Source of the DNA: Salpingoeca rosetta
Taxonomy: Eukaryota; Protista; Choanoflagellata
DNA length: 64,000 nt
Reading direction: 5' to 3'
Assembly: GCA_033442325.1 (NCBI GenBank)
Contig: JAWQFM010000001.1
Coordinates: forward strand, 984,779 to 1,048,778
The position numbers were made by a program, and so were the translations under genes. A model generated the notes under the pieces. That model saw only the letters and a list, made by a program, of their open reading frames with translations. It did not search any database and was not told the DNA's origin. Of the stretch, positions 1-19,964 are shown one piece after another. Each line of letters begins with the position of its first letter. Positions within the stretch are counted from its first letter, which is position 1.

Positions 1-3701
<3,701 letters not shown>

Positions 3702-4649
3702 TCCTCGTGTGTGTGCGTGTGTGTGCGTGTGTGTGTGCTTGACAGTTCATGTGAGTGTACTTGCCGTGGGATGAAAAATATCCATCGTGTGCTCGTGTAC
3801 CCCTACTTACCATCTGCTTGTGTTGCACGATCAACACCAGACCCTCGTCGCACATATGCCAACGAAAGGCACTGATGATGATACAGATGCGCGGCGTTGT
3901 GACGCTACATTTCATCCCTCTTCAGCTGGCACATGGTTGTGGCTTTGGTTACAGCATGTGTATGTGTGTGTGCATTTCTCCATGTGCATGTGTGTCTCGT
4001 GAGCCATAGTTCATGCGTTTACATCAACGGCCATTGGCTGCGTCTCATTGACATCTGTGCCAACATTACACGCACACAGATATGTTTCCGCTCGTTTTCA
4101 CCATGTGCGTTCCGCTGCAGCCTTTTTCAGCGATTGCTGTATGTTAGCCTCTCTTCCACCGTGGTGCACGTGTACCTGCTGCATTGTTCGTAAGCTTAGC
4201 TCCGGCGCTTGTGTTGTGCTTTAACTGCATTTGTTCCCGCCCGCACCCACTCTGCAGCAACTTGCTTGTTGGGATTCAACATTGTTGAAAAAAAAAACAT
4301 AGAGAACGCGTTGGGCTGGTTCCACATCGTAATGACACGTGAAGCACAGAGGGTTACCGAACGCGCAACACAGCGCTGGCTTGGGCATGTGGTGCAAGCA
4401 AACACAATGGCGAATCAAACGGCAAAGCAGGGAAGAAGGGAGCAAGCGGGTAACCGGCACCCGGCACGAAGCGTCCGCAGAACACCGAAGCAACGAACAG
4501 GTGTACCGTCATGTCATGCAACAACAGCGTGACTACAAGGTCAAATCACAGAAGAACACACGCGGAAGTATCACTTGGGGGACATGTGGCCAAGCGGAAT
4601 AGAGACAACCAGCTGTAATGGAACTTCCTTTTCAGGGACTTGGATGCGG

Positions 4650-5075
4650 TTAAGCCATGCCGTCCGCATTGTACGCCTTTGCTGCTTGCATCAGCTTGAT
4701 TGCTGGCCCAATCTTCACACCCGCCTCTTTGAGCAGGTGCTTTGTCAAATCTCCCTCAATCACCGCCTCCACCAGCACCTCCAGCGAGTCAATGCCGTGC
4801 TCCACAAGCGCCGATTCGACGTGCGGTAGCAGTGAGTGCTGCTGGAGCCACGCCGTTAGCGCAGGCTCCAACGGGGACGAAGGCAAGAATGAGGGCGATG
4901 GGGTTGCAGATAGGAGCGCAGCAGGAGACGAAATCGTGGTGGGCGACGAGGACTGCAGACACAACCCGACGAGACGAGGGCGAGGGGAATGAAACACTGT
5001 GAGCTCGAAGCAGGAGGAACAGGAGCAAGCTTGCAACCCTGCGAACAACCCAACAGCACACACACGCACACAGAC

Positions 5076-5106
<31 letters not shown>

Positions 5107-5127
5107 GAGACAGACAGACAGAGAGAC

Positions 5128-5164
<37 letters not shown>

Positions 5165-5329
5165 CCCACCCACACAGACCGACACCCACCCACACCCACC
5201 CACCCACACCCACACCCACCCACCCACACCCACACCCACCCCCCCCCACCCCACACACACACACACACACACACACACCACCACCACCACCACCACCACC
5301 ACCACCCACCACCACCACCCCCCCCCCCC

Positions 5330-5366
<37 letters not shown>

Positions 5367-6220
5367 GTGCCACGGAAGCGATTGGGCTTGTTGGCGTGAC
5401 TGGCATTAGTGCAGGTATTGGCTGTGGTGTCTGATGCTGCAGTTGGGCCATGTGTTGGCCAGCTGCACTGCTGGCATTGCATGCCGCCACTGCCCTGCGC
5501 ACGTGCTCTGCCATCCTCGCTGCATCGGCCGCTCGGTCATGCTCACTTTGGAACGACACGACGCCGTCCACGTCAAACAACGACAGAACCACTTCGCGCA
5601 CGCTCTTGTGCTGCCGTGGTGGCGGCATGTGCAGCACGTGTGTGAAGTACTCGTCGAGCGCTGCTGCCGTCTTCTCGCTCACAACATCTGGCAGCTTCGT
5701 TGCCAGCCGCTTCATGCGGTCAAATGAGTCATACTCGCTCACTTCTGCCGCGCTCATGGCGTGGCTGCTGCTGTCGTGCCAGCCACTGCCAAGGAAGAGC
5801 GGAACAATGCGGCGAAGGCGGATCTTGTCTGATTGCTGGTGCACGAGCTGCTGCAGCTCCAACATCGCCATCCACTCCAGCAGCACGTTGTCGCACGCGT
5901 CATCGTAATCGAGCGAGCGCATCTGATGAATTGCCGCGACAGACACAACGGGGGAGGCAACAACGCTGTGCTGGATGGCCTGAATGCACGCGTGCTTGAA
6001 GTTAAGGCCCGTCTCCAAGTTGTTGGCATCCATGAACGCAACCAGCCCATGGTGCTCCAGCTTCGGGTGCAAGGCCAACGCCAGACCTCGATTGCCGCGT
6101 TGTCTGTGGCATGTTTGGGGGAGGGGATTTGCATGTAAGGATGTGTCGAGTGAGGGGCAAGCAGGGTGAAACAGACGATGAGCAGGCAGTTGACACACAC
6201 ACACATCCACACACACACAT

Positions 6221-6300
<80 letters not shown>

Positions 6301-8741
6301 CACAAGCACAAGCACACACACACACCTGTAGCTGATGAATACGTCGTACTTGTCCTGCAGACCGAGAATGGGCAGGAGGGGGCCATACTTGGCGACCAGA
6401 TCATCCGGTGGCAGCAAGTCTGAGCGGCCAACGCGAAGCACCCTCTTGTTCGTGTGGTGAAGCAGCACATCCTCAAAGAACAGCAATGTGCTCTCGTCGT
6501 ATGGCACCAACAGCTTGGCCTTGAGGTCAGGATAACGCTGCTTGGCAGCCGCTGTGATGGTGTCGTACAGCATGTGCAGCAATGTGCGAGGGCGTGCATT
6601 CGTGATCTTCACCTTGATGCCACCAACATCCGGCACAAGCTGCAGCTCGATCTCAGCAGCATCCATGAAGATCACGGCGTCCGTGCGGCTCAACATGGGC
6701 GGCTCCGTTGCACCGTGCTGCATGTGTGCCATCACGCGTGCCAACACCATCGCGAACAGCCCCTCTGGCAGGAAGGAGGCTCGCTGGAGGTCTGCAAGCT
6801 GAGCACTCGTGCCCCTTTTCAACCCCTCCAAGCAGAAGGCGACGTACACCGTTTTCTCCTCATACCCAACATAACAGTTGATTTGCTTTGCTGCTGCCGT
6901 GCTCAGCGTGACTGATGACGCCTGTTCATCCTCCAAGGTCATCGGCAGGATTGCTGGGACGAGGTACTGTTGGTGGTGTTGTTGTTGCTGTTGGGGACCG
7001 GGGAGCAGCACCATTGGCGCCGTGTACTGGATACACAGCCCATACTCCATCATGAGGCGCAGGAACGGGTCAATCAAGTTGCTGTCCACGTCTCTCCACA
7101 GCACATCAAGTAAACGACGGTGCAGGATACCGCGGTCAACCAGGTCGTCCCACAGCTGCGCGCCAATGGCCCTCGCCTCGCCATCACGCACATCACGATG
7201 CAGGTCAAAGTTGCGGATGACGCGCGTCATCATGTCCACCGCCCACTGCGGACTCAGGATCACAAAGTCCTCCATGCCTGGCACGCTGTCGTAGTACAGC
7301 ACCATGGAGTACAGGTGCAGGAACTGCAAACAGGCCCTCGTCTCCTGGCGTGTGCGCAGCCCACACGTGTGCGCAATCTGCACCACCTCGTCAAAGGTGA
7401 GCAGCAGTCGCTTCTCGTCGCGGGCGATGGCGTGGAGCTTGTCGTAGAGGTGGAGGTATGGCACAGCCACCTCCTGGCTCACGTACTCCTGCGCCAGTGC
7501 TGTGGAGGAGATAGTCTGGCGCAGGTCCTGGATCATGGGGTCATGGATGGACTTGGTGTTGTCGACGGGCCAGAGCCACAGATTGTGTTTGTAGTTGTAC
7601 ACAACGGAAGGGAAGGCCGGGTTGTGGCGCAGGCGACTGTGGATGTCACGGGATATGTTCTCGTGCTGCTTTCTCTGGCTGACCACATCAGCGAAGGTGC
7701 CGACGATGAGGACGGGTGCGCCCTTTGCATGGAGGTGGAGGGAGGAGAGCCAGTGCTCCATAAACTCCCACGATTCAGCCCGCTTGCTCTCGGCTTGGTG
7801 CAACAGGTCCTCCATTGAGAACACCAGCAGGTACACCGCGTACCTGGTGGGTGGGATGCGGGTGTATGGAAGGAAGGTGTGGGTGGGTGAGTGGGGTGAG
7901 GAGGGGCTAGGATGAGTGGAAGTAGGGTGAAGGGAAACATGTAAGCATACTGACACACACACACACACACACACACAGAGCACATACAAATACATCCCAC
8001 TCACTTGGTGAGGAAGAAAGGGTGGAAGATGTAGAAGGTGGACTGGCCGCCCAGGTCAAAGATTTTGAACGTGACCCTGGCTTTGCCCTCGCCCATGACG
8101 GCGTCCACATTGAACTCCTTGATGGCCTTCTCAATGTCCTCCGCAGACATGCCGGGAGCAGCCGTGGTGACGAGTGCATGCTTGGAGCTTGAGGTGGTGA
8201 ACGATGCCGCCTGTGCTTCATTTGATGGTGCTGGGACATTCGATCGCAGACCAGCCCGTGAAGGCAGTGGTGATGGCGGTGAGGACATGCTTGGGTCACC
8301 GCGCCCGTGAAGAAAAGGGTCAGGGTGCACCTCACTGTTGTCTGGGAGGCCACGTCTGCCCAGCCAGGCAGGCGCGTTTGGATGACCTTCGTCGCCGCCA
8401 CCATGGCCGCTTTGCTCGTTGCTGAGCAGTCGTCGCTGTTTGCTCAGCTGTGGGACAGCACGATCTTCGTCCTCTTCATCATCATCGTCATCATCATCCT
8501 TCACCTGTTGCTGCTGCTTGAGCCGTTGTTGATGCTCCTTCATCGCTTTCTTCATGGTCACCTGCATGGATGCGTCCATGCCAGACATCCTTGCAAGGGC
8601 TGTGCTCAGCAACGAGCGCATGTACTCGCTGAGGTCGCTCCGAAGGTGCTGTTGTGATATGGCGGTATGCAAGTGTTCTGATGAGCCGAAGCGTGCTTCT
8701 TGCGAGCAAGCAGGACAGACAGACAGACAGACAGGCAGGCA

Positions 8742-8784
<43 letters not shown>

Positions 8785-10415
8785 GCACACACCTGCCAGT
8801 TGAAAACCTCCATGGTTTCGACGCTCACGGACATGTCCATGCTGTCGGCACCAAGCGTGGAGTGCTCGTGCATGTTGAACTTCTTGCCCATGAGGGAGTT
8901 CAGAGTGGTGGTCTTGCCCGCACGCCCCTCACCAACCAGCATCAGCTTGGCACGCCCTGCCGTTTGTGCATCTGAGTTCTCTGCAATCTGGCGCATGGCC
9001 GCCATCACCTCCGCTTCACGCTGCTGCTGTTTCTGTTTCTGGTGACACGCAGAAACAGCAGGGAGGTGAGCGACAGTGATAAACACAACCACATACATGC
9101 ACAAACCACACGCACACACAAAACCAGCAGAGGCGGCAAGCACATGACAGCACTGCCACGAACCTCGACGTCTTGAGCAGCACTCACGTCGCTACTGTCG
9201 TTGTTGTTGTCAATATCACCATTGTCATTGGGAGCATTACCGCCATTGTCAACTGGCTGCTGCTGCTGCTGCTGTTGTTGTGTTTCATCTTCTTCTTGTT
9301 GCCGTTCTTCCGCCTCTTGCTCTTGTCCTCCTTGTCCTTCTTCTTGTCCTTGTCCTTCTGCGCCCTGCTGTTGTTCCTGCTTCGGTTGCACTGTCTGTAC
9401 CTGCGCTGGTTCGGGGTGTTGCGGCTCGCTTTGTTCATGCACTGCTGGCTGCTGTTCTTTTTCGTGTTGATTGGATGGCAGCAGGTCTGTTTCCACGCTT
9501 GACTTCGTCTGCTGCTGTTGCCCTCCCTCGTTTGACGAGTGGTCTTGCGGTTGCGGCAGAGACGCTGTGTCTGCGTGAGTGCCCGAAGGCTGCGGTTTGG
9601 CATCTGCCTGTGTCTGCACCGTCATCGTCGTCGTCTCCTCCTGATGCCCCTTTCCGGTTCGTGCCTCCCAGAAAGCCTTCCTCTCCTCCTCCGACAATCT
9701 GGTGAATGTCAGCAGAACACAAGGGCAGAGGATGGTCAGTATCATTTGCGGATGCACGATGCGGTGGGCGAGCGCGACTTCGCAGCCCGATCACCACCAC
9801 CACCACCACCACCACCACCACCACCACCACCGCCGCCAGTACTCTTGCAACTCATTGCAGTGTAGCACATACACACGCGCAGCAGCTTACCCCTCGCACT
9901 CAATCTCTCGCTCGTCGGACAGCGCAGTGCCGAATGCACGCACAGCTTCGACGCTGTTCCCCCACATCCTGCATGGGAGCAACACCCCACGAACGGGGAG
10001 GGGTTGTGAAGTGAACTCGAAGGTACAGGAGTAAACCAGAAGCACATGCGGATAAATGTAGCGGGATTGTGATCATTTTCTTCGCCAAGAACGAGCGTAC
10101 GTGATGTGAGTGAAGGACTTGTTCGCGTTCATTGCTTCTGCAAGGGCACGGCCGCCCGCAGCTCCGACGTGATTGCAGTTGATCCTGTCGGGAGAATCAC
10201 GCGCATGAGTGTCAAGTGTGGGTGAGCGCATATGCAGAAGCTCCTGCGGTGCAAGGCATGATGTTCAGGCACAAAAGAGAGGCGGAACAGGCCACGGGGC
10301 AACTTACCGCGCCGAGCACAAGCTGGTGCTCGTTTGGATCGCACGGGCAAAGGCGACTGCGCCGTCGTCACCGATGTTGTTCTTGTACAGACTGTACACC
10401 AAGCAATCCCCGTCA

Positions 10416-10489
<74 letters not shown>

Positions 10490-12232
10490 AGAAGCACAAT
10501 GGCGAGAGTGAGGCTCAGAGAGTTGGTTGGTGGAACATGAGGGCAGTACAGCTTCTATGCATTGGGCGTGAGAGAGGAAGGAAGGGGAGCATTCGAGAGA
10601 CAACATGGCTGGTATGTGTCATACCTGACCCATCGCAAGCGAGGGTGATTTGCGATGGCATCAGCGAGAGCAATGACGCCTGTGTCGCCCAAATGGGTGT
10701 TATCGAGGCTGTCGCACCCATGACGAGAGTGCAAGTTGGTGTTAGCACGAGAACGGGGTGTTGAGTGGATGTATGATGACAAACGAGCGTCCTCATGGGA
10801 GCGTGCACGCGTGCAAATGCACGATGGCAAACTCTCTCCCAAAACAAAGCCAAGCGAACATGTGGGGGTGAAGCATTGGCAGACAGGCCAGCGTCACTGA
10901 CTCAAGGTTCACGATGCAGGTGTTTGCCTTTAGGGCTTGGGCCAATGCCTTTGCTTCTGGCTCGCCAAGGCGGACACCATCAAAGCTGATTCAAAGAGGG
11001 GGGGGGGTGTATGGGAGTGTCAGTGAGTGAGTGAGTGAGTGAGTGAGTGAGTGAGTGAGTGAGTGAGTGAGTGAGTGAGTGAGTGAGTGAGTGAGTGTGT
11101 GTGTGTGAGTGAGTGAGTGAGTGAGTGAGTGAGTGAGTGAGTGAGTGAGTGAGTGAGTGTGGCAACAACGAGCGAGCACGCACTGGTGTATAGAGCAGAC
11201 AATCACGTGAAGCCATAAAGTAGCCCCTCAACGTTGGTGTCCAACTCACAAGACAGCAGCGTTGCAGGTGTTGGCAGAGATGGATCTGAGCTTGGACATG
11301 GTGGCTTCGTTCAAGTCGCTTTCGCTTAGGGCCTTCTCAAGATCTGCAATCTGCAGCCCAGCCAGATGCGCAGCAGTGCCAGGGTTGACGATGAGGGTGG
11401 TCACATAGGTGCAGCGTGTACGTCCGCGAATATGAAGCACGCGTGTGTTGAGGCCAGCCATATCATGTCACAACGAACAAGCAATGGGGTCTTACTTGCT
11501 GTTCCGGCCCTTCGGTCATCGTTTGGGCTCGCGCGTTTTTGTACGCATTCAGTTCTTCCGCAGCACTGCGATGCCAACGACATAGCGCAATGCCGCGTGA
11601 GCACGACCCGCAGCCCATCAATGTACCAGGCGTGACATGCACATACACATGCGCGCACAAATCCACAAAGTCTGCACACACACACTCACACGCGCACAAA
11701 CCCACAAAGTCTGCACACAGGCACTCTCATGCACACACACACACACACACACTTACACACGCACACAATGAAAAGCAAACACAGGCGAGCGTACAACTCG
11801 ATGACGACTTGACGGTTCGGTGGGAGTGCGCGACCAAAGGCAGCAGCCGTCTCCTTGCCGTTCCCTTGCAGACTGGTGGTGTTCCCAAACAACACGCACA
11901 CACACATGAATGGGGGAGAGTATAGCAGATGAGCACGAAGAAGACACGCGCGCAGAGCGCGACAATGGCGGCATGATGCAGCACAGCAACCAGCGACACA
12001 CCTCAGCTGTTGGAGGGTTTTGTTGGTGTGGAGCGCCAGGCCGAGAGTCCTGCCACCGTTTGCCGTGATTCTGTTCTCGTAGAGACTGCGTCCGCGCGGG
12101 AGCACGCCACACAATAGACGATCATGTGGCGGGAGGAGTGAGAACAAAGCAGACAAATTAGAGCCATGATGATGATGATGGTGATGATGATGATGATGAT
12201 GACGATGATGAAGATGATGATGATGATGATGG

Positions 12233-12298
<66 letters not shown>

Positions 12299-12800
12299 CT
12301 GATGGTGATGATGATGATGATGACGACGACTCATACAGCCAGGTAACTGATTACCGACACAGCTGGGTCGCAGGTGAGCAGTACCAGTGGCAAGGGTCAT
12401 GTGCTTACAGGAGGTGACTCAAGGTCGAGTTGTCCTGAAGTGCACGTGCGAACGCTATGGCGCCTTTGTCCCCGATGCGGTTTCGATCCACACTGCATAT
12501 GGGGGACAAGCAAAACGAACGGAGAAGTTCAGGATAGCATGTCAGAAAAAAAACATGGTTTCGGTTCCATGTACGTGTGCGTTTGTGTGATGTGAGTGAG
12601 TAAGTTAGTTGTGACGCGCGAGAGAATGACTGCAGTGGCATGTACGATTCAGGACAACCAGCACAGCAGGTAGCCTGGTCAGCGTGCTTGCAATTGCAGT
12701 ACGTACAACATGACTTTGAGAGACGTGTTGGTTTTCATTGCATTCGCAAGCGCGTTCGCGCCAGGGCGGCTGATGTAGTTCGAGCCAAGCCTGTGAGTTG

Positions 12801-12881
<81 letters not shown>

Positions 12882-13317
12882 TGATGCGGCATCATCGTGT
12901 GAGATAGGTGGAGTTCACACGCGGCTGTGGGATGCGAGCGCATGGCAAGTCCAGTGCAGAACGTGAGATGGACATACAAGATGCGCTCGAGGGTGTTGTT
13001 TTTCCTGAGTGCGCCTGCAATGGCCATGGCTCCCTCATCTTGGACGTTGGCGCTTTGAAGGCTGCAGTCGTGATGCGAATCCGGAGGGGCGGTTCAAAAA
13101 GCAAGCAGGGAACACACGCGTGAGCAAAATTTTCATCCACCCACGACCAAGTTTATCGCACACGCATACACACAACCATACACACACACACACACACACA
13201 CATAAAGGCATGTGGTTTAGAGGCTCACCTGAGCCTGAGAAGCGACGTGTGGTGTTTGAGTGCAGCGGCGAGAATGGCAGCACCGGTTGGCCCGAGCCGC
13301 GTTCCATCCAACCTAAT

Positions 13318-13388
<71 letters not shown>

Positions 13389-14218
13389 AAATACACACAC
13401 AGACAGACACACACACACATAAACGTGAGTAAGCGGGCAACCAACGACATGTTACGTTATGCCATGTGAACTTCCTTGTTGTGAGTGAGGTTGCTGCGGC
13501 AAGGACAAAGACTGTACCCCCAAACCACAACATCACGGCTGTTGGTGTGTCATGCCAGGAACATGAACTGCAATCACTCACTCAAGCTCTTGTAATCGGC
13601 CACTGTCCCTGAGTGCAAGGGCGAGAACGCGGGCGCCCTGTGTGTGGAGCGGCGTGTAATTCAGACTGGCAGTGGTGCCACCACAATTGTAAGTGCGAAA
13701 GGGGCGAACGAGTGAGGCCATGAAGTGTGGGCGAGGGATCAGATTGCAGAGATTGTGCAACAGGCAGCAGTGCTTGCTGTGAGGGAGCGCATGCAACTGT
13801 ACTGATCACTTACTCAGCGGCGGCACAATTGTTCTTGGCAATGGCTTGAATGCTGCGTCTTGTCTTTGGCTTCAGGGATTGCTGCTTCAGCATGGCACCC
13901 AGGTTGTCCCACTGATGTCAGACAAGAGAGCACGTGAGCAAGCACGCAAAGGGCAGGGTCAGCATGTTGACAAGCCCATGAGCAAGATGGTAAGCTGGTA
14001 AATGTTTCCAGAGAGTTGTGGAATTCAAGACGGGATGGATGGACGCACGTTGAGGTGGTGCGTTCTCTTCTCTTCTCGGGCATCGTCGAGAGCATCCCGT
14101 TCATCATTGCTGAGACTGAAGGCGAACCACAAGCGTTTAGTTGGTGAGGCAGTGGGGCACAGAAAGTCAAAAAGCCAAGCATAGCAAGAAACACACACAG
14201 ACACAGACACACACACAG

Positions 14219-14249
<31 letters not shown>

Positions 14250-14527
14250 AAAGAGGGTGGATGGTGACCTGGATCACGTGTTGTTCTCAACTCACTCATT
14301 GCATTGCATCATGCGCTCGGGTGGCAGCGCGGCGCCAAATTCCCGGATGGCGTCGATGCTGTTGCCCCACAACCTGCACATGAGTACGAAGGCATGCGCA
14401 AGTGGTGAGGGTGAGAGCAAAGAGGAATCACAGCGCACACAAGACAAAAGGAACTTCGACAGTGCAAGGCGTAAACATGTGTGTGCATGCGTGTATGCGT
14501 GTGTGTGTGTGTGTGTGCATGCGTGTA

Positions 14528-14565
<38 letters not shown>

Positions 14566-14684
14566 CGCAATTTGCCAAGCACGATCAGCAACGCACGTAA
14601 TTTGGGTGAGTTTGCTGTTCTTCTCCATTGCCGTTCCCAGCGCGCGGCCGCCATCGGGCCCAATGTTGTTGCAGTTGAGCCTGC

Positions 14685-14780
<96 letters not shown>

Positions 14781-14947
14781 ACATCGGGGGGTCAGGCACG
14801 TAGCAGCGTTATCGCAGGGAAGAGCGTCAGTTGTGCGTCTCCACAGCCCCACAGACACGTGGGCATGCAGACAGGTCGCTATACGGACCCTCGCACACTC
14901 ACGCACACATACACAGACAGTTTAATGTGCAGATAGACACACGGCCA

Positions 14948-14988
<41 letters not shown>

Positions 14989-16145
14989 CTGCACACACAC
15001 ACACACACACGCACACACAATCACACCTGATGACGTATAGAGAGTTGTTCTGCTGGAGCGCTGCTGCAAATGACCCGGCACCTTCATCGCCAATGTCGTT
15101 GTTGAACAAGCTTTGGTCGCAGAATGCCCAATAATGTTGGATGGATGCATTGGTCAGCACAATTGCGTACGTGAGCATGATCGTGAGCGTGTGCGAGTCA
15201 AGCAGTATGCGAGTTGGCGGCTGCTGCAAACGAGTTGGCATGACATAGCACCTGCAGCATGCTCATCGTACCTGAGCCACTGCAGGGACGTGTGGGTTGC
15301 GATGGCATCTGCAACCCTGGCAGCACCTTGGGGCCCCAAGGTATTGTTGTCCAAGCTGTCATTGAAGCCGCGTTGAGGAACCGAAGCGACACATGTCAGG
15401 TCATGTGTGCACGAGTCCACACGCAAACACACAATGACACACAAACATACACATACATGCACACAAATGCCACTTATACACACACATGCACACTCTTACA
15501 CCCACACACACATACATACATACACACATTGACATGCACACACACACACACACACAAACACACACGTGCACACTAAGAAGGGGCAAAGTAGACAAGGGGG
15601 AGCTGAGAACACACGATGTCCCTTCTTCAAGTGGTGCAAGCCCACGTACTTAAGCCTTTCGAGGTTGGTGTTGACGGAGAGGGCCACGGCCAAGGCACCA
15701 GCGCCTGTGGGGCCAAGCGAAGCGCCCTCCAACCTGTGTTGGCAAAGTGTCGCGTGCAGGGTGCAGGCCGCGTGTGCAAAAAGACGCGTGTGAGCTGGCA
15801 GCGTTGGGGAAAGTCAAAGACAGAGCAACAGTGTGCTGCAGTGCACAGATCAACAGCCATGATAAGGAACGGGTGGATGCTTGAGCAGTTCGTTGGTTGT
15901 TCGCTTTGCGGGAGCACTCGTCCAGCGTCGGCTTACGAGATACGTGCAGCGCAGCTGCCGTTGGCTATTGCTTCGATGAGCTCCTTGTCCCGCTGTTTGA
16001 GGTGAGGAGCTTCCGCAAGCGCTTTTCGCACAGCATCTTCCTTCTCATCCTTCTCATCCTTTGCCAGAGACGTTGTTGGAGCGTGGGAGACTACTGGATG
16101 CTCCTTGGTCTCTCCCCCTTTGCTGCTTTTGTCGGTGGTCGACAT
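4650..16145 (-). CDS. LRR-Roc-COR-TIR-SAM ROCO protein, 28 exons, ~1979 aa
   Basis: Exons 15937-16145, 15650-15733, 15272-15355, 15027-15110, 14597-14680, 14296-14373, 14049-14115, 13814-13911, 13582-13665, 13229-13312, 12978-13061, 12707-12790, 12409-12492, 12002-12085, 11795-11872, 11496-11565, 11250-11350, 10902-10985, 10625-10708, 10308-10391, 10101-10184, 9891-9968, 9164-9698, 8793-9038, 8005-8648, 6326-7843, 5365-6103, 4650-4952. All are GT-AG and phase-compatible, summing to 5940 nt. RI-like LRRs (LxxNxIGDxGAxAxAxAL). Roc: KLMLVGEGRAGKTT, DLGGQSTF, PVLIVGTFAD. COR: LQFLHLYSMVLYY..VILSPQW. TIR: YDVFISYR..FMD..DNVLLEW. C-terminal SAM-like: WLQQHSL..LVEHGIDSLEVL..LKEAGVKIGPAIKL. Confidence 0.88.
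11022..11160. repeat. (GAGT)n tetranucleotide microsatellite in ROCO intron
   Basis: Directly visible gagt repeats. Confidence 0.95.
12166..12330. repeat. (GAT)n trinucleotide microsatellite in ROCO intron
   Basis: Directly visible; lies between LRR exons 12409-12492 and 12002-12085. Confidence 0.95.
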
Positions 16146-16636
16146 GTTGTGCGCTCTGAGAGGGTGATTGGCGTGTGTTGTGTTGTGTCTTCGGCTGGCG
16201 CTGTCCTGCTTGCCGACAAATAACCAAAGTTTTCATACAATCGTCTACGACAAGCTTGCTGTGCCATGTATTGCCTGCTCGCTTCTTTTCGTCGTGCTTG
16301 CTTCATGCCTCATGCTTCTCCGTTCACATGGGTTCACTGCATGCTGTGAATGTGGTTTGTGTGTCACACGTCACACACGTGTCGCACGTCACACATGTGT
16401 CACACACGTGTCACCACACGTACGCAAACAACAAGTCAACAAGCTCACACGCAAGGGCAGTACAGCAGCAAGGCGGAAGAGAACAGGCCCTTCCCCAACC
16501 CTCACAACTTGAACAGCTCTCACAACAACACCACGAAAAGGGACAAGAGGGGTTGAGGTTGAGAAGGTGGTGGTGGTAGCGGTGATGGTGGTGGAAGGGC
16601 ACAGGGCAAAAAGCGCGCGCGCGTGTGGAGACAGGC

Positions 16637-19964
<3,328 letters not shown>

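What the first reader, a model, noticed from the sequence alone, without database searches (positions are those of the whole stretch)
4650..16145. Candidate innate-immune receptor: (LRR)x3-Roc-COR-TIR-SAM in a single chain
Seen: one phase-consistent 28-exon ORF joining sensor-like LRRs, a Roc GTPase and COR, then a TIR and a C-terminal SAM instead of a kinase. Known: ROCO proteins are GTP-dependent dimerisation switches; LRR-Roc-COR-TIR fusions occur in bacteria; TIR enzymes in SARM1, plant TNLs and Thoeris need clustering to cleave NAD+; SAM domains oligomerise SARM1. Inferred: an NLR-analogous sensor-switch-effector that uses Roc-COR in place of NACHT/NB-ARC. I do not recall a characterised eukaryotic protein with this full architecture.
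Basis: partly seen in the sequence, partly recalled or inferred. Interest (0 to 1): 0.88.

Follow-up and report, generated by a model that had tools for sequence, protein, structure and literature searches.

The report
Choanoflagellate LRR-Roc-COR-TIR-SAM receptor-like gene
This is a real, expressed gene of the choanoflagellate Salpingoeca rosetta that joins three leucine-rich-repeat sensor modules, a Roc-COR GTPase switch, an NAD-cleaving TIR domain and a SAM domain. It is one of about 40 similar genes in that genome, and the TIR of a sister copy has already been shown to make cADPR.

Summary
The order is three RI-type LRR modules, a Q/E-rich linker, Roc with a 188-aa insert, COR-A/COR-B, TIR with its catalytic Glu, and a C-terminal SAM.

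Stranded RNA reads and spliced contigs support every junction from the last LRR module to the SAM exon. LRR modules 1 and 2 are joined by inference only.

The organism is Salpingoeca rosetta. The gene is not unique: the genome holds about 40 Roc-COR loci of this family, at least 30 of them with this TIR type beside them. At least 29 annotated public proteins belong to the family (mostly LRR-Ank-Roc-COR-TIR), and most of the 23 whose C-termini I aligned end in the same SAM. The scan had already noted a sister gene on another piece of this genome (s1-432458).

A 2026 preprint showed that the TIR of paralogue F2UB80, 71% identical to this one, makes cADPR. ROCO-TIR proteins are also reported in a red alga.

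The NLR-like reading is plausible. In four paralogues the LRR modules have dN/dS near 1 with changes on the concave face, against 0.11-0.21 in Roc-COR. No immune role has been shown. Verdict: a new member of a known kind, of moderate interest.

The parts
4650..16145 (-). Whole coding region: 27 exons, 1990 codons, ATG at 16145-16143, TAA at 4652-4650
   Evidence: Exon chain with canonical GT-AG sites and one open frame. Stranded RNA reads lie on the minus strand.
15937..16145 (-). Exon 1: start codon, K/E-rich N-terminus and the N-cap of LRR module 1 (…IEAIANGSCAARI), with a GTAAGC donor
   Evidence: The N-terminus aligns from residue 5 with residue 3 of annotated paralogue PTSG_13066.
14296..15733 (-). 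LRR module 1: four 84-nt phase-2 exons (one RI-type 28-aa LRR each) plus a 78-nt closing exon (LWGNSIDAIREFGAAL…)
   Evidence: One search gives the exon list. Half-repeat LRR_6 hits on single exons. 36% identity to the LRR_6-positive module of PTSG_13066.
14049..14115 (-). Inter-module helix/linker exon (LSNDERDALDDAREEK…)
   Evidence: Parallel 'LS.EER.A…AR' segments follow modules 2 and 3.
11795..13796 (-). LRR module 2: a cap fused to the first LRR (13796-13582), five more 84-nt LRR exons and a 78-nt closing exon
   Evidence: The acceptor of the cap exon is the least certain boundary in the model.
11250..11565 (-). Linker exon (11565-11496) and the N-cap exon of module 3 (11350-11250, …ISANTCNAAV)
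9891..10985 (-). LRR module 3: four 84-nt exons plus a 78-nt closing exon (MWGNSVEAVRAFGTAL…)
   Evidence: RNA joint across intron 10100-9969, joining exon 20 (ends at 10101) to exon 21 (starts at 9968).
9164..9698 (-). Exon 22: 178-aa Q/E-rich low-complexity linker, where most paralogues carry ankyrin repeats
   Evidence: RNA joints 9891|9698 and 9164|9038, and one X4 contig spanning the exon. No Pfam hit. Composition.
7549..9038 (-). Roc GTPase: P-loop GEGRAGKTT (8933-8907), 188-aa insert (8648-8085), DLGGQ (8057-8043), GTFAD (7701-7687)
   Evidence: Pfam Roc 7.1e-12. Motif coordinates. An X4 contig covers 8034-8651 without a break, so the insert is exonic. Joint 8005|7843.
6496..7458 (-). 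COR-A (7458-6946) and COR-B (6777-6496), in the same 1518-nt exon as the C-terminal half of Roc and the first TIR strand
   Evidence: Pfam COR-A 6.3e-19 and COR-B 3.9e-4.
5460..6351 (-). TIR domain, about 222 aa, split by intron 6325-6104. The catalytic Glu (E1720, codon 5877-5875) lies in NVLLEW.
   Evidence: TIR_2. 71% identity over 222 aa to the cADPR-producing TIR of F2UB80, whose E1118 aligns with this Glu. E and W are invariant in 34 sequences. AF2 model pLDDT 87.5; the top 29 Foldseek hits are all TIR domains. An X4 contig is spliced across the intron.
4653..4862 (-). C-terminal SAM domain (five helices) in the last exon (4952-4650), after an S/P/T-rich linker
   Evidence: SAM_2 21.1 bits against a gathering score of 20.5; 16 of 24 family tails hit SAM_2. 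AF2 pLDDT 94.9. The top structural matches are SAM domains: Foldseek TM 0.60-0.67, and VIA Z 8.5 with rmsd 2.3 A over 65 residues to Caskin2 SAM, with the top 18 rows all SAM. An X4 contig is spliced 5365|4952.

Best explanation
The locus is one expressed Salpingoeca rosetta gene. It encodes a 1990-aa cytosolic ROCO protein made of three RI-type LRR modules, a low-complexity linker, a Roc GTPase with a 188-aa insert, COR-A/COR-B, an enzymatic-type TIR and a C-terminal SAM. It belongs to a family of about 40 ROCO-TIR(-SAM) genes in this genome.

Shown here:
- The domains and their order.
- Splicing from LRR module 3 through to SAM.
- Intact G1 and G3 motifs in Roc.
- The catalytic Glu of the TIR.
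- The SAM fold.
- Family expansion, with fast-evolving LRR faces in four paralogues.

Shown by others: the TIR of a 71%-identical paralogue makes cADPR from NAD+ when expressed in E. coli.

Inferred mechanism. The LRR modules hold the protein in an off state and bind a ligand or a guarded target. The Roc-COR unit, a nucleotide-dependent dimerisation device in other ROCO proteins, converts that event into a change of oligomeric state. COR dimerisation together with SAM self-association brings TIR domains together. TIR NADases need this to form an active site, and the assembled TIRs then produce cADPR and/or consume NAD+. The output is most likely a defence or stress response, working like an NLR without being a STAND ATPase.
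For: Gene model, junctions and strand.

Domains: Pfam; structures.

Organism and family:
- The top hits are S. rosetta paralogues with LRR/Ank-Roc-COR-TIR.
- The own genome gives 45 TIR-exon matches, falling on about 35-38 loci, and about 40 COR loci; at least 30 COR loci have a TIR match alongside.
- The SAM-like tail aligns at the C-terminus of 23 annotated paralogues, 16 of them at 51-65% identity.

Enzymatic TIR:
- F2UB80 is PTSG_12359 (P0154). Its TIR spans 1034-1255 with catalytic E1118 and is marked as a cADPR producer in Table S4 of bioRxiv 10.64898/2026.04.20.719644.
- The window's TIR is 71% identical to it, with the Glu aligned.
- E and W of the LEW motif are invariant in 34 homologues.
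- The nearest solved folds are plant TNL TIRs and SARM1.

Receptor-like evolution:
- In four paralogues the LRR module has dN/dS 0.85-1.23 against 0.11-0.21 for the Roc/COR exon.
- The amino-acid differences concentrate at the x positions of LxxLxLxxN.
- The window's LRRs are only 32-42% identical to those of paralogues, while Roc-to-SAM is 59-86% identical.
- The uniform 84-nt phase-2 LRR exons are shared with paralogues.
- Relatives add other C-terminal domains: PNP_UDP_1, SH2, or a second TIR.
Against: - No functional data exist for this gene or for any full-length family member. The cADPR result is for an isolated paralogue TIR over-expressed in E. coli.
- Junction evidence stops at exon 20. 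LRR modules 1 and 2 are joined only by an open frame and canonical splice sites.
- In runs X17 and X19 depth over 8200-10000 is at most 2.4, against 3-9 (X17) and 0.2-4 (X19) over 5400-7000. This could mean a shorter isoform, or cross-mapping of paralogue reads; about two thirds of laid reads were only 95-99% identical.
- The Roc G4 motif reads TFAD rather than N/T-K/H-x-D, and a 188-aa insert sits before G3. GTP binding is not proven.
- The SAM self-association test gave no answer.
- The dN/dS evidence comes from four other paralogues, not from this gene, and the six pairs are not independent.
Confidence: 0.6

Rival explanations
1. The protein is the same, but its job is not immunity. It would be a receptor for environmental or bacterial cues, or an internal signalling node. 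Its TIR would make cADPR as a Ca2+-mobilising second messenger, for example in feeding, settlement, or the rosette and mating decisions that S. rosetta takes in response to bacteria.
For: - The paralogue TIR makes canonical cADPR, and the preprint reports that most of the tested TIRs did not deplete NAD+.
- cADPR is an established Ca2+ messenger (general knowledge).
- S. rosetta life-history switches are driven by bacterial molecules (general knowledge).
- The gene is expressed in ordinary culture RNA-seq.
Against: About 40 copies with LRR faces evolving at dN/dS near 1 is the pattern of receptors in an arms race rather than of a housekeeping signalling node. The extra domains in relatives, such as PNP_UDP_1, are of the kind found in conflict systems. 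Neither point is decisive.
Confidence: 0.25
2. The long ORF is not what the cell mostly makes. The main products would be shorter isoforms, for example Roc-COR-TIR-SAM or COR-TIR-SAM from an internal start, or LRR modules 1-2 as a separate transcript. The full (LRR)x3 fusion would then be rare or absent.
For: - Depth falls 5' of about 8200 in two of the three RNA runs.
- There is almost no depth at 10200-10599.
- No junction reads were available upstream of 10184.
Against: - In X18 depth is similar across 5400-6000 (12-20) and 8400-9800 (mostly 5-13, with a dip to 1.8 at 8600-8799, where the 144-nt intron and a microsatellite lie).
- Junctions link exon 20 through to Roc.
- Depth at 7000-8200 is inflated by paralogue reads, shown by the many mixed-base positions.
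- Reads of 101 nt crossing two junctions of 84-nt exons are hard to lay.
- RNA-type runs hold about the exon-only share of 31-mers of 10600-16200.
- Seventeen consecutive phase-2 exons stay open in one frame, with introns of 123-346 nt and no room for a promoter.
Confidence: 0.1
3. The TIR and SAM act only as protein-protein adaptor modules, as in animal TLR/MyD88 signalling, recruiting other TIR or SAM proteins rather than cleaving NAD+.
For: S. rosetta has other TIR proteins, for example the TPR-TIR proteins listed in Table S2 of the preprint. Animal TIRs are classically scaffolds.
Against: The catalytic Glu and the neighbouring Trp are invariant across 34 family members and distant relatives. 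A 71%-identical paralogue TIR is catalytically active in a Glu-dependent way. The nearest solved folds are enzymatic plant TIRs and SARM1.
Confidence: 0.05

Closest known systems
Salpingoeca rosetta F2UB80 / PTSG_12359 (paralogue; its TIR was tested in bioRxiv 10.64898/2026.04.20.719644)
   Same: - Same family: 66% identity over 1148 aa from Roc to SAM, and 71% over the TIR.
- Same catalytic Glu.
- Same C-terminal SAM-like tail.
- Same RI-type LRR module.

   Different: The paralogue is 1352 aa, with one LRR module followed by ankyrin repeats. The window gene has three LRR modules, no ankyrin repeats and a Q/E-rich linker instead. Only the isolated paralogue TIR has been assayed.
TPR-ROCO-TIR of the red alga Chondrus crispus, and the LRR-ROCO families of brown algae (Teng et al. 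2024, PMC11378527)
   Same: Both have a Roc-COR core with a repeat sensor at the N-terminus, and a TIR after COR in Chondrus. The brown-algal ROCOs also have one LRR per exon, all phase 2, and are proposed immune receptors.
   Different: Here the sensor is RI-type LRRs of 28 aa encoded by 84-nt exons, not TPRs. The brown-algal ROCOs lack TIR and SAM, and the paper describes their LRRs in groups 1 and 2 as a different subtype. Homology of the exon structure was not tested.
Plant TIR-NLRs (RPP1, ROQ1, RPS4, RUN1)
   Same: Both pair an LRR sensor with a nucleotide switch and an enzymatic TIR. The plant TIR domains are the best structural matches to this TIR. The LRR faces diversify in both.
   Different: The switch here is a Roc-COR GTPase, not an NB-ARC STAND ATPase. 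The domain order is reversed, with TIR C-terminal and LRR N-terminal. This protein carries a SAM. No resistosome-like assembly has been shown.
SARM1 (ARM-SAM-SAM-TIR)
   Same: Both combine SAM with a Glu-dependent NADase-type TIR. SARM1 also yields cADPR, and its SAM oligomerisation clusters the TIRs.
   Different: This protein has a single SAM placed after the TIR, not a tandem SAM before it. It has no ARM domain, and it has LRR and Roc-COR upstream. It is not a member of the SARM1 family.
Prokaryotic and animal LRR-Roc-COR proteins (Chlorobium tepidum Roco, human MFHAS1, LRRK2)
   Same: All share the LRR-Roc-COR core. In these proteins COR mediates dimerisation coupled to the GTPase cycle.
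   Different: This protein has no kinase and a TIR-SAM output instead. It has a 188-aa insert in Roc and three LRR modules.
Paulinella micropora g13037 (P0034)
   Same: It has Roc-COR followed by TIR and a terminal SAM_2 domain, so the Roc-COR-TIR-SAM order is not confined to choanoflagellates.
   Different: It has an N-terminal WH1 instead of LRR modules and two TIR-like regions. It is about 31% identical over Roc-COR. It is uncharacterised.

Membership tests
ROCO proteins | Roc (Ras-of-complex) GTPase domain with P-loop and DxxG motifs | tested here: met
   Pfam Roc 7.1e-12, 46.1 bits against a cut-off of 27. GEGRAGKTT and DLGGQ are present; G4 reads TFAD. Nucleotide binding itself was not tested.
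ROCO proteins | COR domain immediately C-terminal of Roc | tested here: met
   COR-A 6.3e-19, 68.7 bits against 35.3. COR-B is 20.7 bits, below its cut-off of 27. Both lie in the same exon as the end of Roc.
Enzymatic (NADase-type) TIR domains | TIR fold | tested here: met
   TIR_2 scores 22.8 bits, below the cut-off of 28, because the domain is split by an intron. AF2 model pLDDT 87.5. The top 29 Foldseek hits are all TIR domains with probability 0.75-1.00 (27 of them at 0.96 or above).
Enzymatic (NADase-type) TIR domains | Catalytic glutamate at the active-site position | tested here: met
   E1720 in NVLLEW aligns with E1118 of F2UB80, the residue listed as catalytic in Table S4 of the preprint. 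It is invariant in 34 sequences.
Enzymatic (NADase-type) TIR domains | NAD+ cleavage or cADPR production | not testable with these tools
   Known only for the paralogue TIR expressed in E. coli (bioRxiv 10.64898/2026.04.20.719644).
SAM domain | Sequence match and five-helix SAM fold | tested here: met
   SAM_2 21.1 bits against 20.5; 16 of 24 family tails hit SAM_2, best 2.7e-6. AF2 pLDDT 94.9 with five helices. VIA Z 7.1-8.5 to SAM domains of Caskin2, ANKS4B, SHIP2 and tankyrase, rmsd about 2.2 A over 59-65 residues. Z near 8 is only moderate for a small helical domain.
SAM domain | Self-association (oligomer or polymer) | tested here: inconclusive
   Complex prediction with two copies gave 'no answer', score 0.00. 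This is not evidence either way.
RI-type leucine-rich repeats (Pfam LRR_6) | Tandem 28-29-aa LxxLxLxxNxIGxxGAxxLAxAL repeats | tested here: met
   Fourteen 28-aa units fitting the consensus are read directly from the sequence. Single exons give half-repeat LRR_6 hits in 5 of 10 cases, E 0.004-0.016, because exon borders cut the Pfam unit. The modules are 34-42% identical to that of PTSG_13066, which scores LRR_6 5.6e-17.
NLR / STAND receptors | NACHT or NB-ARC STAND NTPase domain | tested here: not met
   No NACHT or NB-ARC hit in any piece from 9757 to 4650 or in exon 1, nor in six related proteins, five of them S. rosetta paralogues. The protein may work like an NLR but is not one.
LRRK-type ROCO kinases | Protein kinase domain after COR | tested here: not met
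   No Pkinase hit. The UniProt automatic name 'non-specific serine/threonine protein kinase' on the paralogues is not backed by a kinase domain.
SARM1 family | ARM - tandem SAM - TIR order | tested here: not met
   A single SAM follows the TIR, and there is no ARM domain.

The most novel reading that the evidence does not exclude
[quoted passage not shown] It would be built on a Roc-COR GTPase instead of a STAND ATPase. Diversity would come from duplication and shuffling of one-LRR-per-exon, phase-2 modules with diversifying selection on the LRR concave face. The output would be TIR-made cADPR, with SAM and COR driving clustering. This gene, with three LRR modules in tandem, would then be a receptor with multiple or extended specificities.
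Probability: 0.4. Interest if true: 0.75.

Novelty: new member of a known kind. Interest (0 to 1): 0.58.

Why it matters
Choanoflagellates are the sister group of animals, and how they sense microbes inside the cell is largely unknown. A large, fast-evolving family that couples LRR sensors through a Roc-COR GTPase to an NAD-cleaving TIR would be a third solution to the sensor-switch-effector design, after plant and animal NLRs and bacterial STAND/Avs systems.

S. rosetta has CRISPR genetics, so the idea can be tested directly. The Roc-COR unit is also the core of LRRK2. A natural system in which Roc-COR controls a simple enzymatic read-out (cADPR) could therefore serve as a model for how ROCO switches work.

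This single gene adds little on its own: the family is annotated and one TIR has been assayed. The family-level pattern described here is what deserves follow-up. It comprises the terminal SAM, module triplication, per-LRR exons, dN/dS near 1 on the LRR face, and the other C-terminal domains carried by relatives.

Tried and rejected
- **First gene model.** My dynamic-programming gene finder (after a time-out) mis-joined most LRR exons and cut false introns into the Roc insert. I replaced it with a model curated from the RNA joints and the 84-nt phase-2 rule.
- **SAM profile against PDB sequences**: no meaningful hit. The SAM call rests on Pfam and on the fold.
- **Complex prediction, SAM x2**: 'no answer'. 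It is not used as evidence.
- **Looking for the window's own protein in public sets.** Two homologous-protein searches, on the TIR and COR regions, were limited to proteins of 598-1904 aa. They returned only paralogues at 86% identity or less. I could not tell whether this gene is annotated; a model of about 1990 aa falls outside the length range the tool can see.
- **PADLOC on the window's TIR and COR pieces**: nothing. The complete paralogue TIR gives only weak hits to bacterial defence TIR profiles (SAVED-TIR, TIR-pAgo, ThsB).
- **Literature.** Searches combining Salpingoeca or choanoflagellate with ROCO, or Roc-COR with TIR, found no description of this family beyond the 2026 TIR preprint. 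Subscription journals are not covered.
- **Brown alga considered and rejected.** My first guess from the exon-per-LRR structure was a brown alga. The protein hits name S. rosetta.
- **Continuation beyond the stop considered and rejected.** The 3.3-kb extension of an X4 contig beyond 4600 is unlikely to be more coding sequence. No minus-strand ORF follows the TAA, and a convergent plus-strand gene lies at about 2000-4000.
Full report
**What is in the sequence.** The window is GC-rich eukaryotic DNA (52-59% GC) with short introdns full of (TG)n microsatellites. On the minus strand between 16145 and 4650, six-frame reading shows a string of short open pieces with LRR-like text, followed by long pieces. 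Pfam on the long pieces gave the following:
- Roc: 7.1e-12.
- COR-A: 6.3e-19.
- COR-B: 3.9e-4.
- TIR_2: 1.3e-4, below the gathering score because an intron cuts the domain.
- SAM_2: weak.
- No kinase, NACHT or NB-ARC hit.

**Gene model.** A first automatic model was poor. I then listed all AG..GT exons that keep phase 2, read the borders by eye and assembled 27 exons. All sites are GT-AG, the frame stays open for 1990 codons, and the stop is TAA at 4652-4650.
- Fourteen LRR exons are exactly 84 nt, each encoding one 28-aa RI-type repeat. Three module-closing exons are 78 nt. All 17 are phase 2.
- The repeats form three modules of 4+1, 6+1 and 4+1 exons. Each is preceded by a cap of the type '…ANGSCAARI' and followed by a helix of the type 'LS.EER.A…AR'.
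- Next comes a 178-aa Q/E-rich linker (exon 22).
- Roc carries GEGRAGKTT, a 188-aa insert, DLGGQ and GTFAD.
- COR-A and COR-B follow. The TIR starts at KYDVFISYR, and the last exon holds an S/P/T-rich linker and the SAM.

**Transcription.** Three stranded RNA-seq runs of the same species and one run kept as contigs were laid on 4600-10599.
- First mates lie almost only on the plus strand. In most stranded libraries that means a minus-strand RNA.
- Read joints match introns 10100-9969, 9890-9699, 9163-9039 and 8004-7844.
- Contig pieces are spliced across 6325-6104 and 5364-4953. The few odd letters the aligner reported there are explained by short repeats at the splice sites.
- A contig covers 8034-8651 without a break, so the Roc insert is exonic. 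It stops three bases past the predicted acceptor, and those three bases (CAG) equal the end of exon 23. That is what a splice 8793|8648 would produce.
- LRR module 3, the linker, Roc, COR, TIR and SAM are therefore linked piece by piece. In addition, the end of Roc, COR and the first TIR strand share one exon.
- Weak points: no reads were laid upstream of 10599. Depth 5' of about 8200 is low in two of the three runs. Depth at 7000-8200 is inflated by paralogue reads, as shown by many mixed positions and by two thirds of reads being only 95-99% identical.
- A second index look-up showed that the RNA-type runs hold 0.17-0.30 of the 31-mers of 10600-16200. About 0.22 is expected if only the exons are present. 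This supports expression of the upstream exons but not their linkage.

**Organism and family.** An exhaustive HMMER search with the Roc/COR exon found 1568 relatives. The closest are Salpingoeca rosetta proteins:
- PTSG_13066: LRR-Roc-COR, 83-86% identical.
- PTSG_11903: LRR-Roc-COR-TIR.
- PTSG_03500: LRR-Ank-Roc-COR-TIR.
- PTSG_09165: Roc-COR-TIR.
- PTSG_02681: Roc-COR, a TIR-like region and a C-terminal PNP_UDP_1.

Word-index searches listed 24 and 30 proteins; 29 of the latter are annotated S. rosetta proteins, mostly LRR-Ank-Roc-COR-TIR of 1245-1728 aa. None was identical to the window. The tool could only see proteins of 598-1904 aa, so the annotation status of this gene is unknown.

In the window's own 55.4-Mb assembly the TIR exon gives 45 matches on about 35-38 loci, and the COR exon matches about 40 loci. 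At least 30 of the COR loci have a TIR match next to them. The window's copy has no near-duplicate: the next best match is 76% for the TIR and 85% for COR.

Relatives with Roc-COR-TIR exist in other choanoflagellates (S. infusionum; Didymoeca costata, which adds an SH2 domain) and in unnamed metagenome contigs. Hartaetosiga balthica and Mylnosiga fluctuans have relatives that match the window's TIR in a sequence search, but their domain content is only partly tested. The rhizarian Paulinella micropora has WH1-Roc-COR-TIR-SAM.

**TIR.** Table S4 of bioRxiv 10.64898/2026.04.20.719644 lists S. rosetta F2UB80 (1352 aa, TIR 1034-1255, catalytic residue 1118) among the TIRs that make cADPR when expressed in E. 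coli. The text names S. rosetta among non-animal cADPR producers and states that activity depended on the glutamate. F2UB80 is PTSG_12359, my P0154.
- The window's TIR is 71% identical to it over 222 aa, and its E1720 (NVLLEW) aligns with E1118.
- Across 34 homologues, down to 24% identity, the E and the following W are invariant.
- An AF2 model of the exon-26 part, which lacks the first strand, has pLDDT 87.5. Its best 29 Foldseek matches are all TIR domains: plant TNL TIRs first (RPS4, RUN1, L6, RPP1; TM by target about 0.6), then SARM1.

**SAM.**
- The last exon aligns with the C-termini of 23 annotated paralogues, F2UB80 among them; 16 of them are 51-65% identical and the rest are more distant.
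- The 76-aa piece scores SAM_2 at 21.1 bits against a cut-off of 20.5, and 16 of 24 tails hit SAM_2.
- AF2 gives a five-helix bundle at pLDDT 94.9.
- Foldseek's top rows are SAM domains with TM 0.60-0.67, though the E-values are not significant for so small a domain.
- The second-look aligner gives Z 8.5-7.1, rmsd about 2.2 A over 59-65 residues, and its top 18 rows are all SAM domains.
- I take the SAM fold as established and its oligomerisation as inferred. The pair prediction gave no answer.

**Evidence that bears on the receptor reading.**
- Two paralogue loci show the same 4x84 + 78-nt phase-2 module, followed by ankyrin exons, so the exon-per-LRR design is a family trait. The number of LRR exons appears to differ between loci.
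- For four close paralogues I compared the LRR module with the Roc/COR exon using Nei-Gojobori estimates. The LRR module has dN/dS 0.85-1.23 (dN 0.05-0.13). The Roc/COR exon has 0.11-0.21 (dN about 0.03).
- dS is lower in the LRR module, which hints at gene conversion or shuffling.
- The amino-acid differences pile up at positions 1-3 and 24, 25 and 27 of the 28-aa unit. These are the x positions of LxxLxLxxN, which line the concave face in solved LRR proteins (general knowledge).
- This pattern is also seen in plant and animal immune LRR receptors. It comes from only four genes, and the window's gene is not among them. The pairs are not independent and no formal site test was run.
- For the window's gene the same trend shows only as 32-42% identity in the LRRs against 59-86% from Roc to SAM.

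**How it most likely works.**
- Shown: the domain chain, the intact G1 and G3 motifs, the catalytic Glu, the SAM fold, expression, and the family pattern.
- From established knowledge: ROCO Roc-COR units dimerise through COR in a nucleotide-dependent way (C. tepidum Roco, LRRK2). TIR NADases need two or more TIRs side by side to form the active site (SARM1, plant TNL resistosomes, bacterial TIR systems). SAM domains oligomerise, as in SARM1, tankyrase and Caskin.
- Inferred: ligand binding, or loss of a guarded partner, at the LRR modules releases Roc-COR. The change in nucleotide state, together with COR and SAM contacts, clusters the TIRs. The TIRs then make cADPR and/or lower NAD+.
- Whether the outcome is defence, cell death or a Ca2+ signal is open. 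I put the immune reading at about 0.4 and a non-immune cADPR signalling role at about 0.25.

**Comparison with what is known.**
- The protein is a member of the ROCO family (Roc + COR: tested and met).
- It carries an enzymatic-type TIR (fold and Glu met; activity not testable here) and a SAM (met).
- It is not an NLR/STAND protein, not an LRRK-type kinase and not a SARM1 family member (defining features tested and not met).
- ROCO-TIR is already in the literature: TPR-ROCO-TIR in Chondrus (PMC11378527). The legend of Figure 3 of the 2026 preprint, which shows the architectures of the tested proteins, defines LRR, Roc and COR among its abbreviations, and a sister protein's TIR has been assayed.
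- I did not find the following described in the searchable literature: the terminal SAM, the size of the S. rosetta family, the per-LRR phase-2 exons, the LRR-face divergence, and the tripled LRR module without ankyrin repeats in this gene.
My paralogue data agree with it.

**Verdict.** This is a new member of a known kind. Interest is moderate for the single gene and higher for the family-level hypothesis.

Noticed in passing
L001 (G000:C29:885500-895499), L002 (G000:C30:50000-59999), L006 (G000:C4:68500-76500), L009 (G000:C36:34500-42500): Four close paralogues have LRR modules with dN/dS 0.85-1.23 against 0.11-0.21 in the Roc/COR exon. dS is lower in the LRRs, and the changes are concentrated at the x positions of LxxLxLxxN. 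This suggests diversifying selection plus gene conversion or exon shuffling.
   Followed up: partly
P0002 (PTSG_02681), G000:C4 about 943753-945973: One family member carries Roc-COR, a TIR-like region that keeps the LEW motif, and a C-terminal PNP_UDP_1 (nucleoside phosphorylase-type) domain instead of SAM. This is another effector-like addition.
   Followed up: partly
P0034 (Paulinella micropora), P0014 (Didymoeca costata), P0013 (metagenome contig of 4.3 kb): Roc-COR-TIR occurs outside S. rosetta with other partners: WH1…TIR-SAM in a rhizarian, SH2-TIR in another choanoflagellate, and an apparently intron-free 999-aa Roc-COR-TIR on a short metagenome contig. The origin of the fusion, whether vertical or transferred, is open.
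   Followed up: partly
Public records of the paralogues: UniProt's automatic name for most family members is 'non-specific serine/threonine protein kinase'. No kinase domain is detected in the six I scanned or in the precomputed Pfam lists.
   Followed up: partly
window 7000-8100: RNA reads show dozens of mixed-base positions and a second joint form (7843|8008 with three extra letters). These are best explained by transcripts of paralogues mapping here at 95-99% identity. Depth here is not a measure of this gene's expression.
   Followed up: partly
window about 2000-4600: An RNA contig that includes the SAM exon runs 3.3 kb further past 4600. No minus-strand ORF follows the stop, but plus-strand coding-like pieces lie at about 2070-3400. 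The likely cause is a convergent neighbour with overlapping 3' ends, or a long 3' UTR.
   Followed up: no
window 11020-11200, 12160-12400, 16640-16900, and most introns of the gene: The gene's introns and its 5' flank carry dense microsatellites. Nearly every intron has (TG)n. There is a 12-nt unit that reads SLTH at 11020-11200, and long trinucleotide runs at 12160-12400 and 16640-16900.
   Followed up: no
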